Shown here one piece after another: positions 56,628 through 63,103 of a stretch of 64,000 nucleotides of DNA. The stretch's first letter is position 1. Every line of letters begins with the position of its first letter. The translations under genes and the position numbers were made by a program. A model generated the notes under the pieces. The model was not told where the DNA came from. It made no database searches and saw only the letters and a list, made by a program, of their open reading frames with translations. This stretch comes from Salisapilia sapeloensis CBS 127946 (taxonomy: Eukaryota; Protista; Oomycota): the NCBI GenBank assembly GCA_023334545.1, contig JAADVB010000003.1:1-64000 (forward strand), read 5' to 3'.

Positions 56628-58861
56628 TTAGAAGTTGAAAAGGCTGTCCTGCCAATGCAAGTCGGTAGGAGGGAATGCGTCGGAGGAGATGGAAGCATTC
56701 TCATCGTACAAAGTCACCACGCCGAGACTATCGCATCACGAAAATAGAGTAAGTAGTGAAAGTAAGTTGGAAATACGTTGAAGAATGTACTTGTCCGAGA
56801 CGGCGAGAACCGATGCAGAGTCTTTTGTGAATGCCCCACTTGTCTTGTATCGTTGTCCGTTAGATGACATTTCATGCGCTTGATGCCTATAAGAACTGTG
56901 AGCGACAAAGAATGGAGATTGTGCTTGATGCAAGTGTACGTACAAGATGAGTGGCTCGAGCTGTTTCGACGCTTCTTTCCATTCTGCCATGACAAAGCTA
57001 CGATAGTTCATAAAGCATTAGTAGTTTATGCGCCATGAGGTTCATCAATGGAAAGAATTTGTATTACCCGTCGTAACCGAAGAAAAGCTGCTTGTTCCGA
57101 TCCGAGCAGGCTTCTCCAATGGCAGTCAAAGGAGACTTCATCGTAGCGTACCTATCGGCAAAGTTTTATAAGTTCGCTCTTTCCATACGTTATTGTGTAT
57201 GGCTAAAGTAATAGCTTACCAGCTTGCTTGGTCTGGCATCCTAATATCGACCAGGGCGATGTTTCCACTCTCAAATCCCAATGCAATCATGTGCTGGCTC
57301 AAGTATGTGTGTGTGAACAGCCCTCCCAAGGCTTCAGCATGCTATAAAATGTACAGCATTAGCCAAATCATCACGTAGAAGCTATTTTGATAACAAGAAT
57401 GCAGACTTACGAGGAACGAACCACGTGAGGTACAGATCTGGGCGCCTCGGCATCTGACGTCGACAAATTGAAGATCGCCGGTGTCCGTTGTCCAGCTCAT
57501 GACATCTCGAGTGTGTGACCAGCGTAGACTAGAGACGACGTTCTGTGCATCAAACTTGGCAATGATAGCAGCTGCACTTGGATCACTATCGCCTCGGAGG
57601 TCCGTGAGTACCACGGTCTCGTCAAAACCTACGAGCATAAGCATGCTTTAATTAAACATTTGAAAGCATTACGCAGTAGAATAAAGCTCACCGCCAGAGA
57701 CGAAACAAGAAGGCTTCGTAGGCCATACTGCCACTTCGCGAATGACATCACAGTGCACGCGCCCAGGTCCATCTAAGGCAGCAGCATTTATGTTTAAGGA
57801 AAAGTGCGATTTGGATTGTTGCAATATGAAAATTACGATGGAGTTGCACGGTGCGTCCTTCACGATCGTTTCCTGTTGCCAGGGTGTAAATGTCGCTTCC
57901 AATGGCAACAACTGCACTGTGGTTCGTCATCCAGTCCAGATCCCTGACCTCCTACATTATAACGTCATATTGGGGTCTAAACTCCAAGTTTCCATAAAGT
58001 GTGAGCACTTACATGTTGAATCGGTATGTAGACCGGAGGTTGGAAAGCTAGTGAGGACCGGTAGTTGGTCACGAGTATATAATTGCGCGTGCCTGTTGGA
58101 TTGTTGGATGACTGAAGCATTTCAGTGCCAACAATAAGCAGTCCATCGTCGCGAAGAATTGGCTTTGACAATGCTAGTTCATGCGAACACATAACGTTAG
58201 AGCCTTAACTGAAGATGGCATCTAGCAGACAGAGCTTACGCATGCAACTGCCATCATTTAGACATCCTATAGACAAAGCAAAAAGCGGCTCCTTTTGTCG
58301 ATGTGGCACATATGTGTACGGCTCCTCTTTTATCGTTGAGGAGTAGCTTTGCATCAAAGCTGCTGAGCTGTTTTGTCTGTCACATACGTAAGACAACAGT
58401 TATGGATATATAAATTGCCGGTGGTCTTACTGATAGCGCGACGACGAAGGTATTGTCCCCAATAGATGATCCGAAGTGGTTAATCTGCTCAGTGAAGATA
58501 CATCGTCGCTGGATGCATGAGGAGCTGTAGAATAGTAGGATGGCATTGTTTGCTGGTAGTTCGTCGGTACGAACGCAAAGTTACTCGGCATGAAGCCCTC
58601 AGATCCGGCAACAAACGGATTGGTCATAGCGCTCATATTGCTTTCCGGCATTGCATTCTCATTGAAAAGACGTTCCCACAAAGCAGAAGAGTAGCTGTCA
58701 CTTTCCTCTTCCATCATTTGCACAGGCTCTCCACTCTTCTCCTCTTGTTCAGATGGTGGAGAAGGTGTTGAAAATGGAGTACTCGGAGGAGATATATTCG
58801 CACAGGATGAATGAGTCGAGCTTGTTTCCTGGTTCGCCATTGCTTCAGTTGTTTGATCCAT
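56628..58861 (-). CDS. WD40-like beta-propeller protein with low-complexity N-terminus
   Basis: DVIREVAVWP...FVSGG-FDETVVLTDL, VVSSLRWS...SWTTDTGDLQFVDVR, LGFESGNIALVDIR; many introns. Confidence 0.7.
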
Positions 58862-59378
58862 TGGAAAAGTGCAATGGGTAGTCAGGTAGAAAAAGCGAAG
58901 TGAGCACAATTGCGAGCATGTCAGTGGTAGTCCAATCCTATCGGGGTGTAAAGTCTCTTGTCTGACGCACTGGCCATAGCTTGCTTCATTGACATTTCAC
59001 CGTCTTGATTCTGGATCCTTTGATCCAGATCTTGTCAAGACTGAATCCTTCAGAAACCGACTTAAAGATACGTATATCATGTCATGACCACAAAGGCTCC
59101 ATTTCCTTCACTCATACCTGTATACGGTTCCGAAAACTAGGTTAAGTCCATATCTATTTATTCTCTTCATATACATAGATCGCATGTATACTCCAGTCCC
59201 CTATTCAGGTCATGGTTCAGATTATTTGCATGCACATGCTCGTCCATCAAAGATGTACAGTAATTAATGCTGAATGCAATATAAAACAGTTCAAAGAGCG
59301 AATGGTAATCGAATGAAGTAGATAGTTCAGAAGACAATGAGCATAGGTAAAGGTTTAGCTTCTTCATGCAACTCTTCG

Positions 59379-61423
59379 CTACTTGTCTACAGGCCGCACG
59401 TATGTGATGTCACCCGATTTAGACACAACTAGACCAGACACTCTTGGCTTTTGCATCTTGTCATCTAGTCCCATATTCGCCCAAATGCGTCGATTACCCA
59501 AAGCTGCGAGCTGAGCTCGTTTCATCGCAATCGACTCTCGATCGAGATTTTCCAACGGAGCAAACACCGTCTCGACATTCAGCATACCTAGATCAAGCCA
59601 GCGTTTGTATAAGAAATAAAAAAGGAAGACTAGAGAGACGTACTGGTATCCGGAAGTTCTCCAGCTTCTTCCTCTTCTCCCGTCGGATCTGTCGATTCAC
59701 CATAGTATCCATCCTTTCTGCCAGTCGATTTTTCCACAGGACTCCCATCCGATCCGACAGAGCCATCAGGAGATGGTGGTGGAGCGTCATAGTCATTTCG
59801 GCGATGAGAAGGGCGTTGACCTACATAAAGAACGTTTGAGAACCAAAAATATATAAGAAAAGATACGTGATCTTACCATAAGTGTTACTGGATTGGGTGC
59901 AGGAGCAGACACTGTTGCAAGCGCAGTGTGAAAAGTGGCAGAAGCGTCCACGTTGACAAACACCTTTATTCTGAAAGTCATAACAGACACCTTTGCCTGC
60001 AGAAGGCGTCGTACCTCGTTTCTTCTTACTCACGTGCCCATAGTCTTGTGCCGGGCTAGCAGGTTCTGATCTTTTCTGAGATGCAGCAGCATTCGCTTTG
60101 CGATTCGGATCATCCGAGAGTAAGTTTTCCACCTCATCTAGCCGCATGTCCTCCGACACTGCTCGTTCGATAAGCGCTAACGAACTCTTTTCCATCGGCA
60201 TCGCCATATCTGGTCGAGTTCGTACATATCGCCATCCACCTATGGCATAACATGGTTAGATCAGAGTCTACTGGATGGAAGATCCTAGAGCTCGACTACC
60301 TTTCCGCCATCCAAGGCCACGATCAGTGGCGTTAAACTCCGGATTACCGACATCCCATGAGCTCTTATCATTCGATGGGATAAACGTAAGCCATTCAGCG
60401 TCATACATGCACTCGATGATCCGAGAAGATGATTTTTTGTCCTGTCGTAACGACTCGAACACCTCTGCAGGTATAAGCTTAGACTTCTTCGAGTTTTAAT
60501 TCTCCTTTTATAAAGATATACCTGATGGGAAGGTGACCCAGTCATGGAAAACTTGTGTTCTCTTATCGTGTAGCATGAGCTTGAAGCCTGGCATAGGTGG
60601 TCTGCCTCTCCACTCGACACTAAGCTGGAACTCGGCCGTTTGTTTGGCTCCTGGCGTCCAATAGTAGAGCGCTTTGGCTTGTCCTGGTGTGTATGGTAGC
60701 AGGACAGGCGTGAAAACAAGTCCGAGGTTTTGCCTCGTCTGAGAGACGCGAGGTAGGATGCTACGAATGACATGCCCGAGGCGGTTTAACGGGTACATGG
60801 ACTGTAAAACAAGCTGAAAGGGCTCTGGCGGATGGTTCTTGGGTAGAGATATCTGTTTACGTGGACCGATGACGTCGTTCTGAATGAGTTTCAACCGATC
60901 CTGGAGCTTGGAGGCCATCACAGGACTTCCATTAAGTGCCAGAATGTCGTATAACAAAAAGGTCACGACGCTTTTCGATCCTTCCTGTTGTCATAAAATG
61001 AATTAGCTCTTGCAAACAGTACTGTAAGAGTCTTGCTACCTTATCACAGACGAGTAATCCGTCTACGATAGTCCAATGGTGTTGGACGGCGACATTTCGG
61101 TCGGCTCCAGGCTGCAGGCGATCGGGGCGCACGGGACAGAATAGCGGCACCTCACGGATGTCATAGCTCGGATAAACGAGGTAGCATCGTCCCTGTGCCA
61201 ATATCGCAAGCGTCCGTACGCCTACACTGCGCTCACAGACGAAATAAGGATGGTCTCCGATCTGCGCTTCGTTCCCTCTCACGAACGGTTGGCCAGTCGA
61301 TATCGGCGCTCGCTCCGTATCCGACCACCCGACGATACGGTTCAACTGCACCTGCACCTGTTTCTTTCCTGCAAGAGGCAAAGGCTGTCCTAGCTCCGTC
61401 GGCAGCTCCTTGGTACTCGGCAT
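59379..61423 (-). CDS. mRNA-capping guanylyltransferase-like pseudoenzyme with CCCH zinc finger
   Basis: GTase motif order preserved but degenerate (YFVCERSVG, IVDGLLV, FLLYD, LGLVFTP, LYYWT, IIECMYD, WRYVRTRPD); C-x8-C-x5-C-x3-H finger CYDFQNKGVCQRGRFCHFSH. Confidence 0.85.
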
Positions 61424-61510
61424 CTTCCTTCGTCTTAATTTTACAAATGTGCAAACGATTTCAAATGTACGTACAAGACGAAATGGACTTGTTATTGCTT
61501 TCTCGGATGT

Positions 61511-63103
61511 CTATAGCTCACTTTCATGCGCCCAGAACTTAAAAGTACGATCGAAACCGGAGGATACGACGTGTCGGCCATCAGGTGCAAAGTCCGCGGA
61601 CATGACACGACCGTCATGAGCTCTTAAAGTCGATAGTAAGGAAAAGTCTCTAGCTTTCCATAGCTTGACACTCGCGTCGTATGATGTACTCATGAGCAAT
61701 TCGCCATGTCCTGGAGCATACCGTACATCTGCTACTAGACCAGCATGTGCTGGTAGCGTATACCTACACTTTCGTTTTCTTAAATCCCAAATGCGCACAC
61801 TTCGGTCGTCACTACTGGACGCCAATTGAGTCCCATCAGGAGCAAAGTCGAGACCGAGAACCTGCTTCGAGTGTCCTTGGAACGACATAATCGCTTTGCC
61901 TGATCGCAAGTCCCACACGCGGATGAGACCGAGGAGGTCAGATGTAGCCACGAGGGATCCGTCCGGGTGGAAAGCGATGGCATAGACTTCCTTGTAGTGA
62001 CCTTCTTGTAGCAAGAGCTCCTTGCCAACGCTCACGTCCCACAGTCGCCATGTATGGTCGAAACTGGTGGTGCCAACGTAATCCCCTGATGGGTGGAAGG
62101 CGACTTTACCCAATCGAGCTTGATGGCCTTGTAGCACGGCCACGGCTTCCTTCTCTCCACTCTTCCATAGTCGAGCAGTGTAGTCGGCGGATCCACTGCA
62201 TAGACAGATGCCTTGATTTTGCTCCTGCATGTCCGCGTAGACGTTGGAAGGGTGCCATGCGACGCCAGTGATGCGGTCTTCATGGCCACTGAGCGTCTGT
62301 GCTAGCTCTGCGTCCTCTGTATTCCACACTTTAACCATACCACTCCATGATCCTGTCGCGACATGCTTCCCGTCACTTGAATAACGGACGCTAGCGACTG
62401 GACGTACGTCTGCGTTCTGACTCATGACGTTGACCATGTCTGAGGTCGCTTTATACGCTTCGAGGGCGATGCTGTCTACCATCTTTTCCGTCTCCTCTAC
62501 ACTTAACGCTTTTTCATACCTCTCTTTCGCTAATCTACTTTCTGCCCTAGTGCGTGAAAAGTCTAGAATATGACTACGAGCTTTCTTTAACAAGTCTTCC
62601 TTGATCGGGATGTAGAAGAGTTCGTCCTCTAGTTTCTTTTCTCTTTCGAATGAGGATTTCTGCTCATTCCCGTCGGTTGATTGGAGACCTAGTTCTTCCC
62701 CTTCAATCTCTCGACGACCGAGGATCTGCCGTAGACGCTCACGCCGGTCGGCAGGACGCTCACCGAATAGTGTCGCTGGTTCATTCAGTGCTCGTAGACG
62801 CTGGATAACATCCTCAGCACTTGTCGGTACTGTGATATTCCGAGCTCGTCTCTCGGCTTCTGCACGACGTAGCAGCTGTGCATGCTTTTCCTGCGCAATG
62901 CGACTGGTTTCCGACAGTTCGAGTACTTCTGTCTCGGCGTTGGCTGCAGCAATATTCACGTTCCCACCACGACTCGTACCGTCCATTCTGACATCCGAGG
63001 CGCCATTCGAACTAGCTGAACCTTGATCTCGTTTCACATGCGAAGGTACGAGGTCCGTCGTGCCTGCAATTGTGCCAAAGTAGATACCCTTCCGGTCGCC
63101 CAT
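61511..63103 (-). CDS. PRPF4: U4/U6 snRNP protein Prp4
   Basis: PRP4 domain (VPTSAEDVIQRLRALNEPATLFGERPADRRERLR) plus seven WD40 repeats; intronless. Confidence 0.96.
   Translation of the reverse strand: MGDRKGIYFGTIAGTTDLVPSHVKRDQGSASSNGASDVRMDGTSRGGNVNIAAANAETEVLELSETSRIAQEKHAQLLRRAEAERRARNITVPTSAEDVIQRLRALNEPATLFGERPADRRERLRQILGRREIEGEELGLQSTDGNEQKSSFEREKKLEDELFYIPIKEDLLKKARSHILDFSRTRAESRLAKERYEKALSVEETEKMVDSIALEAYKATSDMVNVMSQNADVRPVASVRYSSDGKHVATGSWSGMVKVWNTEDAELAQTLSGHEDRITGVAWHPSNVYADMQEQNQGICLCSGSADYTARLWKSGEKEAVAVLQGHQARLGKVAFHPSGDYVGTTSFDHTWRLWDVSVGKELLLQEGHYKEVYAIAFHPDGSLVATSDLLGLIRVWDLRSGKAIMSFQGHSKQVLGLDFAPDGTQLASSSDDRSVRIWDLRKRKCRYTLPAHAGLVADVRYAPGHGELLMSTSYDASVKLWKARDFSLLSTLRAHDGRVMSADFAPDGRHVVSSGFDRTFKFWAHESEL

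What the first reader, a model, noticed from the sequence alone, without database searches (positions are those of the whole stretch)
59379..61423. Catalytically dead mRNA-capping enzyme fused to a CCCH zinc finger
The whole nucleotidyltransferase plus OB-fold layout is retained, but the catalytic residues are replaced together: motif I KxDG becomes RSVG (the GMP-accepting Lys is Arg, codon 61231-61229), motif III DGE becomes DGL, motif IV DGLIF becomes LGLVF, motif V KWK becomes YWT, and motif VI RxDKxxxN becomes RPDMAMPM. The frame is intact and spliced and carries a perfect C8-C5-C3-H RNA-binding finger, so it looks maintained rather than decayed. Precedents for dead GTase folds (snurportin-1 cap binding, the CMTR1 GTase-like domain) suggest a new cap- or RNA-end-binding adaptor or a Pol II CTD-binding regulator. 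It lies immediately downstream of PRPF4.
Basis: partly seen in the sequence, partly recalled or inferred. Interest (0 to 1): 0.78.

Follow-up and report, generated by a model that had tools for sequence, protein, structure and literature searches.

The report
Dead capping-enzyme copy with zinc finger
This water-mould (oomycete) gene encodes a copy of the enzyme that caps messenger RNA; it can no longer do the chemistry, yet it is switched on, correctly spliced and kept almost unchanged in every oomycete examined, so it must now do a different, probably RNA-binding, job.

Summary
A six-exon minus-strand gene (61423-59379, 586 aa) encodes a full guanylyltransferase (GTase) body, nucleotidyltransferase plus OB fold. 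The catalytic side chains of motifs I, III, IV, V and VI are all replaced. A perfect C-x8-C-x5-C-x3-H finger follows.

Spliced transcript contigs from three runs match all five introns exactly. A sister species differs by 33 synonymous and 7 non-synonymous changes (dN/dS about 0.06).

Orthologues occur in all sampled oomycete orders: Peronosporales, Pythiales, Lagenidium, Albugo and Saprolegniales. All of them are dead. The motif I lysine varies (K/R/V/L/Q) and is among the least constrained positions. The zinc module is the best conserved segment.

New here: a marine metagenome sister protein carries the same zinc module with intact catalytic motifs. The fusion therefore predates the loss of activity. 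The PRPF4 adjacency is not conserved.

[quoted passage not shown] Cap binding in the old pocket looks unlikely.

I could not verify a separate active GTase. That rests on unchecked scan notes, which also report a different dead paralogue elsewhere in this genome. No literature on the family was found.

The parts
59379..61423 (-). Coding region of the pseudo-guanylyltransferase gene. Six exons: 61423-61040, 60984-60522, 60464-60300, 60239-59877, 59820-59644, 59587-59379 (stop included). 586 aa.
   Evidence: Frame and GT-AG boundaries. All five introns are skipped by transcript contigs in runs X1-X3 with 0 mismatches.
59300..61488 (-). Minimum extent of the mature transcript: 5' end at or beyond 61488, 3' UTR at least to 59300.
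   Evidence: Contig pieces, table 8.
60649..61291 (-). Nucleotidyltransferase domain (aa 45-240, interrupted by intron 1) with degenerate motifs: I (61234-61214), III (61063-61049), IIIa (60963-60940), IV (60726-60712), V (60663-60655).
   Evidence: PF01331 hits. PDB alignments. Motif table.
61229..61231 (-). Codon 65, Arg in place of the GMP-accepting Lys.
   Evidence: The same position is K, R, V, L or Q in orthologues.
60052..60636 (-). OB-fold domain (aa 245-400, interrupted by introns 2 and 3) with degenerate motif VI (60222-60190).
   Evidence: PF03919 hits in orthologues. AlphaFold2 pLDDT above 95 through residue about 390 of orthologue P0174. Foldseek alignments of 390-430 columns to full-length GTases.
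60010..60021 (-). KKKR basic cluster, a candidate nuclear localisation signal.
   Evidence: Conserved as SKKKRG in Peronosporales and Pythiales and KKQR in Albugo. The function is inferred.
59926..59985 (-). C-x8-C-x5-C-x3-H zinc finger (C423, C432, C438, H442).
   Evidence: PF00642 E 0.0075 in the window and 20.7 bits (above the cut-off) in Aphanomyces. Closest solved fingers are TIS11d and TTP. Invariant in all orthologues and in P0009.
59899..59925 (-). Adjacent invariant C-x-C-x3-C-x-C cluster (C443, C445, C449, C451), a candidate second zinc site.
   Evidence: Invariant across the oomycetes and in the active sister P0009. Zinc binding is inferred.
59777..59877 (-). Conserved GQRPxxRRNDYDAPP segment (aa 459-473, spans intron 4).
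   Evidence: Alignments.
59382..59570 (-). Family-specific C-terminal tail (aa 524-586): a predicted helix (KRAQL...NRRIW) plus two short strands.
   Evidence: Conserved from Phytophthora to Saprolegnia. Found in no other protein in a region-restricted search, whose candidates were limited to 333-1059 aa. Helix predicted at pLDDT about 60. Absent from the active sister P0009.

Best explanation
The gene encodes a pseudoenzyme: a guanylyltransferase-shaped protein that can no longer make the covalent Lys-GMP intermediate.

Shown:
- The complete nucleotidyltransferase plus OB fold is retained.
- Every catalytic side chain is replaced.
- The gene is expressed and spliced, and it is under strong purifying selection.
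- It appears as one family in all oomycete orders sampled.
- It descends from a GTase that already carried the same zinc module and that still has intact motifs in a marine relative.

Inferred:
- The protein is nuclear (KKKR cluster).
- It works as a non-catalytic RNA-binding adaptor. The rigid GTase body serves as a docking module, most plausibly on the RNA polymerase II elongation complex, where real GTases and the dead GTase-like domain of CMTR1 dock.
- The near-invariant TIS11-like CCCH finger, with its adjoining four-cysteine cluster, holds single-stranded nascent RNA.
- The oomycete-specific C-terminal helix recruits a partner.
- Capping itself is done by another enzyme.
For: - Homology and fold: PF01331; PDB capping enzymes. 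The AlphaFold2 model of orthologue P0174 (65% identical, same K to R) has pLDDT above 95 over residues 10-390. It matches Pce1 (E 3e-26) and human GTase (TM 0.82-0.84).
- Deadness: motif table for the window plus 20 named oomycete orthologues, the metaclust sequence P0165 and two environmental relatives. The nucleophile position is K/R/V/L/Q. The former Lys and Asn positions sit at the 86th-95th percentile of variability in the domain.
- Maintenance: spliced transcripts. There are 33 synonymous against 7 non-synonymous differences from a sister species, giving dN/dS 0.06 and binomial p 3e-15. 165 of 586 positions are near-invariant across the oomycetes.
- Zinc module: 74% near-invariant, the best conserved segment. 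Closest solved fingers are the RNA-binding TIS11d/TTP fingers.
- Ancestry: P0009 has KADG, DAELV, NDGLIF, KCK and REDKSMAND plus the same CCCH and Cys cluster. It is sister to the dead clade with SH-aLRT 97-99.
- Precedent: the CMTR1 GTase-like domain anchors on the Pol II stalk RPB4/RPB7 (PMC11139899).
Against: - No direct evidence for nuclear localisation, RNA binding, Pol II association or any partner.
- CTD-binding sites differ between every GTase studied (PMC4066402), so sequence cannot test docking. The Arg157 equivalent of Pce1 and Cgt1 is Ser here.
- The zinc region and tail are modelled at low confidence.
- The window's own spliced protein could not be handed to the fold or database tools by reference, so an orthologue stood in.
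- A separate active GTase in this genome is known only from unchecked notes.
Confidence: 0.5

Rival explanations
1. It is a cap or 5'-end reader. The relic nucleotide pocket still binds GpppN, m7G or GTP non-covalently, as the first reader proposed by analogy with snurportin-1.
For: Several pocket residues stay invariant: motif I Gly and Arg(+5), motif III Asp-Gly, motif IIIa Asp, motif V Trp, and motif VI Arg, Arg and Asp. The cleft-forming two-domain fold is intact.
Against: All phosphate- and ribose-contacting charged residues are replaced by neutral or hydrophobic ones, and those positions now vary freely (86th-95th percentile). The guanine-stacking aromatic is Y in 14 of the 21 sequences compared but S, T or N in 7. 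There is no hit to the snurportin cap-binding model PF21974, whereas another oomycete paralogue does hit it.
Confidence: 0.15
2. It is a protein-protein regulator of the real capping machinery. As a pseudoenzyme partner or decoy it binds the active triphosphatase-GTase or the cap methyltransferase, or it competes for their polymerase docking site. The finger would play only an accessory role.
For: Pseudoenzymes commonly regulate their active paralogues (general knowledge). GTases bind their triphosphatase partners (Cet1-Ceg1 structure 3kyh among the hits). The oomycete-specific tail exists only in the dead clade.
Against: The most conserved element is the RNA-type zinc module, and it predates inactivation. 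No partner has been identified. The active enzyme could not even be retrieved here.
Confidence: 0.2
3. It is still an enzyme, using a non-canonical nucleophile or a different nucleotidyl or phosphoryl chemistry.
For: The window has Arg and 12 other oomycete sequences keep Lys at the nucleophile position. Motif III Asp and motif VI Arg and Asp persist.
Against: The nucleophile position is V, L or Q in seven species. The motif III Glu, motif IV Asp and both motif V Lys, which contact the nucleotide in active GTases, are absent from all members. From my own knowledge, alanine scans of Ceg1, PBCV-1 and Mce1 found these residues essential.
Confidence: 0.03
4. It is a decaying pseudogene or a strain-specific lesion of the real capping enzyme.
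For: The K to R change at the nucleophile is specific to a few lineages: the window, Globisporangium and one Pythium-like sequence.
Against: The frame is intact, the transcripts are spliced, dN/dS is 0.06, and the same losses occur in all oomycete orders with 44-66% overall identity.
Confidence: 0.01

Closest known systems
Cellular mRNA guanylyltransferases (S. pombe Pce1 4pz6, C. albicans Cgt1 1p16, S. cerevisiae Ceg1 3kyh, human/mouse RNGTT GTase 3s24/3rtx, PBCV-1 1ckm)
   Same: The same two-domain nucleotidyltransferase plus OB fold and motif order. Sequence E-values are 1e-14 to 1e-7. Foldseek gives E 3e-26 and TM up to 0.84.
   Different: Lacks the motif I Asp (and here the Lys), motif III Glu, motif IV Asp, both motif V Lys, and the motif VI Lys and Asn. 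Carries a C-terminal CCCH finger, a Cys cluster and a unique tail.
Environmental GTase-CCCH protein P0009 (marine metagenome contigs L001-L003)
   Same: Sister lineage. It shares the family-specific inserts (RPDR..., EWRG.PP.PGFKL, GLGWRKGGW) and an almost identical CCCH plus C-x-C-x3-C-x-C module followed by GQRP.
   Different: All catalytic motifs are intact. After an intron its C-terminus is an acidic, low-complexity stretch ending in KKTK, without the oomycete tail. The source organism is unknown.
GTase-like domain of the cap 2'-O-methyltransferase CMTR1
   Same: A catalytically inert GTase fold retained as a structural and docking module. It anchors CMTR1 on the Pol II stalk (PMC11139899).
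   Different: In CMTR1 the domain is fused to an active methyltransferase, a G-patch and a WW domain. Here it is a stand-alone GTase body with an OB fold, a zinc finger and no active enzyme domain. Its origin is independent.
Snurportin-1 m3G-cap-binding domain
   Same: A GTase-related fold without catalysis, used for RNA 5'-end recognition (my own knowledge).
   Different: No match to Pfam PF21974, no IBB domain, and the OB domain is retained. A different oomycete paralogue (Thraustotheca P0046) does match PF21974.
TIS11d / tristetraprolin CX8CX5CX3H fingers
   Same: Same spacing and the best PDB sequence match for the finger (1rgo, E 2.8e-4). The aromatic residue in C-x-F-x-H is kept.
   Different: A single finger rather than a tandem pair, no lead-in R/KYKTEL motif, and it is followed by an extra four-Cys cluster.

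Membership tests
mRNA guanylyltransferase (covalent nucleotidyltransferase superfamily, EC 2.7.7.50) | Nucleotidyltransferase domain followed by an OB-fold domain | tested here: met
   PF01331. PF03919 in orthologues at 24.5 and 19.1 bits, just below the 26.5 cut-off. AlphaFold2 pLDDT above 95. Foldseek top hits are all GTases.
mRNA guanylyltransferase (covalent nucleotidyltransferase superfamily, EC 2.7.7.50) | Motif I KxDG with the nucleophilic lysine | tested here: not met
   RSVG in the window. KSVG, RSVG, VSVG, LWSG and QWTG in orthologues. None has KxDG.
mRNA guanylyltransferase (covalent nucleotidyltransferase superfamily, EC 2.7.7.50) | Catalytic residues of motifs III (Glu), IV (Asp), V (Lys-x-Lys) and VI (Lys, Asn) | tested here: not met
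   L123, L215, Y236/T238 and M349/M353 in the window. All are replaced in all 21 oomycete sequences compared.
mRNA guanylyltransferase (covalent nucleotidyltransferase superfamily, EC 2.7.7.50) | Formation of an enzyme-GMP adduct and transfer to ppRNA | not testable with these tools
   Needs an [alpha-32P]GTP labelling assay.
CCCH (C-x8-C-x5-C-x3-H) zinc finger, Pfam PF00642 | Cys/His spacing and a profile match | tested here: met
   Exact spacing C423/C432/C438/H442. PF00642 scores 16.6 bits in the window exon (below the 20.5 cut-off) and 20.7 bits in Aphanomyces P0006. PF00642 and PF18345 are precomputed for P0204. TIS11d E 2.8e-4. Invariant in all members.
CCCH (C-x8-C-x5-C-x3-H) zinc finger, Pfam PF00642 | Zinc and single-stranded RNA binding | not testable with these tools
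   Needs metal analysis and RNA-binding assays.
Snurportin-1 | Match to the m3G-cap-binding domain model PF21974 and an N-terminal IBB domain | tested here: not met
   No PF21974 or PF11538 hit for the window exons at E up to 1, or for orthologues at E up to 0.1.
CMTR1 | GTase-like domain joined to an RrmJ/FtsJ methyltransferase, a G-patch and a WW domain | tested here: not met
   The only domains found are PF01331, PF03919 and zf-CCCH.
Oomycete pseudo-GTase-CCCH orthologue group (P. infestans PITG_17110, Albugo AlNc14C27G2649, Saprolegnia SDRG_08950 and others) | Dead motifs plus the invariant CCCH/Cys cluster, GQRP segment and C-terminal KRAQL...NRRIW tail | tested here: met
   63-66% identity to Peronosporales and Pythiales members, 54% to Albugo, 44% to Aphanomyces, collinear over the full length. 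Lies inside the clade with SH-aLRT 99.

The most novel reading that the evidence does not exclude
Oomycetes, and a few uncultured relatives, turned an ancestral zinc-finger-bearing capping guanylyltransferase into a stand-alone, non-catalytic nuclear factor. It would still ride on the transcribing RNA polymerase II and hold the nascent transcript through an almost invariant CCCH plus four-Cys module. That would make it a third, independent invention of a 'dead GTase' RNA-processing factor, after snurportin and the CMTR1 GTase-like domain, and the first that keeps the whole two-domain enzyme body. The active ancestor-like form is still available in nature for direct comparison.
Probability: 0.3. 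Interest if true: 0.72.

Novelty: new variant of a known kind. Interest (0 to 1): 0.58.

Why it matters
- Dead copies of RNA-capping enzymes are rare. The two known examples, snurportin-1 and the CMTR1 GTase-like domain, each revealed a new way of recognising RNA ends or polymerase surfaces.
- This family is conserved and expressed in every oomycete sampled, a group that includes major crop and animal pathogens. It was not seen outside oomycetes and a few uncultured relatives.
- Databases label it 'mRNA capping enzyme' or 'C3H1-type domain-containing protein'. The first label is a functional mis-annotation.
- A natural active sister with the same zinc module allows a clean before-and-after study of how an enzyme becomes a pseudoenzyme.
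- Together with the second dead paralogue and the reported TTM-GTase fusion, it suggests an unusually elaborate set of capping-enzyme-derived proteins in oomycetes.

Tried and rejected
- **Window protein not submitted.** The window's spliced 586-aa protein has no single reference. I did not type it into the fold, database or contig look-up tools. Exon references and orthologue ids were used instead, and P0174 was folded as a proxy.
- **Search for the active oomycete GTase (the TTM-GTase fusion).** Pfam scans of 23 representative hits with N-terminal extensions and name look-ups of 30 clusters found none. They found only cysteine-phosphatase-type enzymes from other eukaryotes and the second dead oomycete paralogue (P0046). 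This is inconclusive, not evidence of absence.
- **PRPF4 linkage.** Rejected: the neighbours differ in Aphanomyces, Albugo and P. infestans.
- **Snurportin identity.** Rejected: no PF21974 hit and no IBB domain.
- **Tail and zinc module in other proteins.** The ESM Atlas feature search gave nothing. The region-restricted homology search returned only family members.
- **CTD-binding residues.** Mapping Pol II CTD-binding residues from Pce1 and Cgt1 was uninformative, because each GTase uses a different surface.
- **Literature.** Searches by locus tag, by 'oomycete capping enzyme' and by pseudoenzyme terms found nothing on this family.
- **Organism identity.** The species was not resolved beyond 'oomycete, roughly equidistant from Phytophthora, Pythium, Globisporangium and Lagenidium'. 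Its weak grouping with Aphanomyces is probably a long-branch effect.
Full report
**1. The observation**

Reading the minus strand of 59200-61520 and joining GT-AG-bounded exons gives a 1,761-nt reading frame of 586 codons. The exons are 61423-61040, 60984-60522, 60464-60300, 60239-59877, 59820-59644 and 59587-59379.

The model is not just a prediction. Contigs of 1.8-1.9 kb from three runs of one study lie on the window without a single mismatch. They skip exactly these five introns of 55-60 nt. They extend from at least 61488 to 59300. The runs have small contig sets and the contigs are spliced, so they behave as transcriptomes, although the record does not say RNA.

Pfam's capping-enzyme catalytic domain matches exon 1 (E 6e-6) and exon 2 (E 2e-12). 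phmmer against the PDB finds only capping enzymes (3rtx, 4pz6, 3kyh, 3s24, 8p4a, 1p16; E 2e-7 to 3e-5).

- Motif I YFVCEKSDGIR is replaced by YFVCERSVGVR. R65 is codon 61231-61229, exactly as stated.
- Motif III DGE is replaced by DGL.
- Motif IV DGLIF is replaced by LGLVF.
- Motif V KWK is replaced by YWT.
- Motif VI RxDKxxxN is replaced by RPDMAMPM.

The finger is C423-x8-C432-x5-C438-x3-H442. The upstream neighbour (61511-63103, minus strand, intronless) is PRPF4, with the PRP4 motif PF08799 and seven WD40 repeats.

**2. Is it maintained?**

Contigs from a second organism (run X5, about 96% identical) also carry three of the spliced junctions. They differ at 40 listed coding positions, 33 synonymous and 7 non-synonymous. 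Over the 532 covered codons this gives dS 0.095, dN 0.0057 and dN/dS about 0.06. It would be 0.12 even if the seven unlisted differences were all non-synonymous. The binomial p is 3e-15.

An exhaustive HMMER search with exon 2, followed by two word-index searches with full-length orthologues, recovered one family. Members come from:
- Phytophthora (six species)
- Hyaloperonospora, Plasmopara, Bremia, Peronospora and Peronosclerospora
- Lagenidium and Globisporangium
- Pythium insidiosum
- Albugo (two species)
- Aphanomyces (five species)
- Saprolegnia, Achlya and Thraustotheca

The names come from the sources. The window protein is 63-66% identical to the Peronosporales and Pythiales members, 54% to Albugo and 44% to Aphanomyces. 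It is not itself in the database. The organism is therefore an oomycete outside the sampled genera. Earlier scan notes about elicitin-like genes in this window pointed the same way.

**3. The deadness is family-wide, and the lysine is not special**

- All 21 oomycete sequences compared lack the motif I Asp (V, T or S instead).
- All lack the motif III Glu (L, T or V).
- All lack the motif IV Asp (A, S, L or T).
- All lack both motif V lysines (H/Y/N/S... and T).
- Nineteen of the 21 lack the motif VI Lys, and all lack the motif VI Asn.
- The nucleophile position is K in 12, R in 2 (the window and Globisporangium), V in Pythium insidiosum, L in Aphanomyces and Q in Saprolegnia, Achlya and Thraustotheca.

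Measured by column entropy within the GTase body, the former Lys I, Lys V-1, Lys VI and Asn VI positions sit at the 86th to 95th percentile of variability. The structural residues stay invariant: motif I Gly and Arg, motif III Asp-Gly, motif IIIa Asp, motif IV Gly, motif V Trp and motif VI Asp. The guanine-stacking aromatic of motif IIIa is Y in 14 sequences but S, T or N in 7.

This is the signature of a pocket released from constraint inside a scaffold that is still constrained. 165 of 586 positions are near-invariant. The K to R change is lineage-specific, but no orthologue has an intact KxDG or any of the other catalytic residues.

**4. The fold**

The window's spliced protein has no single reference, so I folded Globisporangium P0174 (65% identical, also Arg at the nucleophile) with a 60-sequence alignment. 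Residues 10-390 have pLDDT of about 95-98. The zinc region and linkers are below 50. The C-terminal tail forms a helix and two short strands at about 60.

Foldseek against the PDB ranks only capping guanylyltransferases at the top: Pce1 E 3e-26, Cgt1, human RNGTT at TM 0.82-0.84, Ceg1 and PBCV-1. The alignments span 370-430 columns, covering both domains. DNA ligases follow far behind. The claim that the whole nucleotidyltransferase plus OB-fold layout is retained is correct.

**5. Ancestry: the fusion is older than the inactivation**

P0009 (three marine metagenome contigs, L001-L003) is 40% identical to the window protein. It shares the family-specific inserts and an almost identical CCCH finger, C-x-C-x3-C-x-C cluster and GQRP segment. 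Yet it has KADG, DAELV, NDGLIF, KCK and REDKSMAND, so every catalytic motif is intact.

On L001 a 67-nt GT-AG intron follows. The last exon encodes an acidic, low-complexity end with KKTK, not the oomycete tail.

In an IQ-TREE analysis, P0009 is sister (SH-aLRT 97) to a clade of two further environmental sequences (P0196 and P0012, both with degenerate motifs) plus the oomycetes (SH-aLRT 98 and 99). The zinc module therefore served an active capping enzyme first. Catalysis was lost later, and the C-terminal tail was gained in the dead lineage.

**6. What is conserved instead**

The zinc module (aa 421-462) is the best conserved segment, 74% near-invariant across all oomycete orders. Its nearest solved relatives are the single-strand-RNA-binding fingers of TIS11d and tristetraprolin (E 2.8e-4 and 2e-3). 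The aromatic residue of C-x-F-x-H is kept.

The four cysteines immediately after the finger's His (C443, C445, C449, C451) are invariant, also in P0009. I take them as a candidate second zinc site (inference).

A KKKR cluster precedes the finger in most orders, so I infer nuclear import.

The C-terminal tail is conserved from Phytophthora to Saprolegnia. A region-restricted search found it in no other protein, although its candidates were limited to 333-1059 aa. The ESM Atlas gave no lead.

**7. Mechanism**

Shown:
- a conserved, expressed pseudoenzyme with an intact GTase body
- a dismantled and now unconstrained active site
- an extremely conserved RNA-type zinc module

Inferred: the body acts as a docking module and the zinc module binds nascent RNA. 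The best precedent is CMTR1, whose inert GTase-like domain anchors the enzyme on the Pol II stalk (RPB4/RPB7) (PMC11139899). Real GTases bind the Ser5-P CTD and Spt5 (PMC4066402).

That paper stresses that each GTase reads the CTD through a different surface, so sequence cannot test docking here. The equivalent of Pce1/Cgt1 Arg157 is Ser, next to an invariant Lys, which is inconclusive.

I put about 0.5 on the adaptor reading as a whole. That is above 0.9 for 'maintained pseudoenzyme' and about 0.3-0.35 for Pol II-coupled RNA binding specifically. The rivals score as follows:
- a regulator or decoy of the active capping machinery, 0.2
- a cap or 5'-end reader using the old pocket, 0.15, disfavoured by section 3 and by the absence of a snurportin-model match
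- residual unconventional catalysis, 0.03
- a decaying gene, 0.01

**8. Context**

The PRPF4 adjacency is not conserved in Aphanomyces, Albugo or P. infestans, so it says nothing about function.

Scan notes report two other GTase-like genes in this genome. One is a TTM-triphosphatase-GTase fusion (s1-289013, s1-314527, unchecked). The other is a second dead, OB-less paralogue (s1-318888, followed up). I met the counterpart of the latter in Thraustotheca: P0046 has a DSPc-like domain plus a GTase-like domain with RARG at motif I, and it matches the snurportin model PF21974. Thraustotheca also has a member of the present family (P0206).

I could not retrieve an active oomycete GTase with the tools at hand. 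Seven orthologues have no possible nucleophile and oomycetes need capped mRNA, so another GTase must exist in them. This is an inference.

**9. Novelty**

The proteins are in public databases as 'hypothetical', 'C3H1-type domain-containing protein' or, wrongly, 'mRNA capping enzyme'. No paper in the searchable library mentions the family or its locus tags.

Dead GTase folds are a known kind (snurportin, CMTR1). This is a new, independently evolved variant that keeps both domains and adds a zinc module, with an active sister still living.

Noticed in passing
window 61488-61511: The PRPF4 stop codon (61511-61513) lies only about 23 nt upstream of the 5' end of the pseudo-GTase transcript contig (61488). 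The PRPF4 3' UTR and terminator must therefore overlap the promoter or 5' UTR of the next gene. PRPF4 is intronless, while its neighbour has five introns in 2 kb.
   Followed up: partly
window 59238-59322: The transcript contig of run X1 leaves the window at 59322 and continues with 17 letters that match 59238-59254. This could be a roughly 67-nt 3'-UTR intron without obvious GT-AG ends, or an assembly artefact. The contig of run X3 is collinear there.
   Followed up: no
window 59571-59769 and 59857-60096 (run X5 contigs): In the sister organism (run X5), two contigs run unspliced through intron 5 and into intron 4, while other contigs of the same run are spliced at introns 1-3. This means either a DNA/RNA mixture or intron retention. 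Intron 5 carries small deletions relative to the window.
   Followed up: no
P0046 (Thraustotheca clavata THRCLA_07237), related to scan note s1-318888: A second, different dead capping-enzyme paralogue exists in oomycetes. It has a weak DSPc-like domain plus a GTase-like domain with RARG at motif I and no OB fold. Its GTase-like part matches Pfam's snurportin m3G-cap-binding model (PF21974, E 5e-7), so it might be the oomycete snurportin-like factor.
   Followed up: partly
L001 1918-3620 (marine metagenome contig): An apparently active GTase-CCCH gene from an unidentified marine eukaryote. It has one 67-nt GT-AG intron and a short acidic last exon ending in KKTKMGC. The metagenome gene call stops at the intron. 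The neighbouring 457-aa ORF has no Pfam hit.
   Followed up: partly
P0012 and P0196 (environmental contigs): Two uncultured relatives show intermediate decay. P0012 has RPEG at motif I and keeps the second motif V Lys (EWK). P0196 has lost motifs IV-VI, and its gene call reads through an intron inside the Cys cluster. They may belong to early-diverging marine oomycetes.
   Followed up: no
database entries P0165, P0173, P0181, P0204, P0001, P0172: Several public gene models of this family are fused to neighbours (an LRR protein; one is named 'Plasma membrane ATPase'), are frameshifted variants, or retain an intron (Peronospora effusa, inside the zinc module). Annotation of the family is unreliable.
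   Followed up: no
window 58427-58909 (minus strand): The next ORF downstream (160 aa, Ser/Thr/Pro-rich) has no Pfam match. I did not check whether it is a gene.
   Followed up: no
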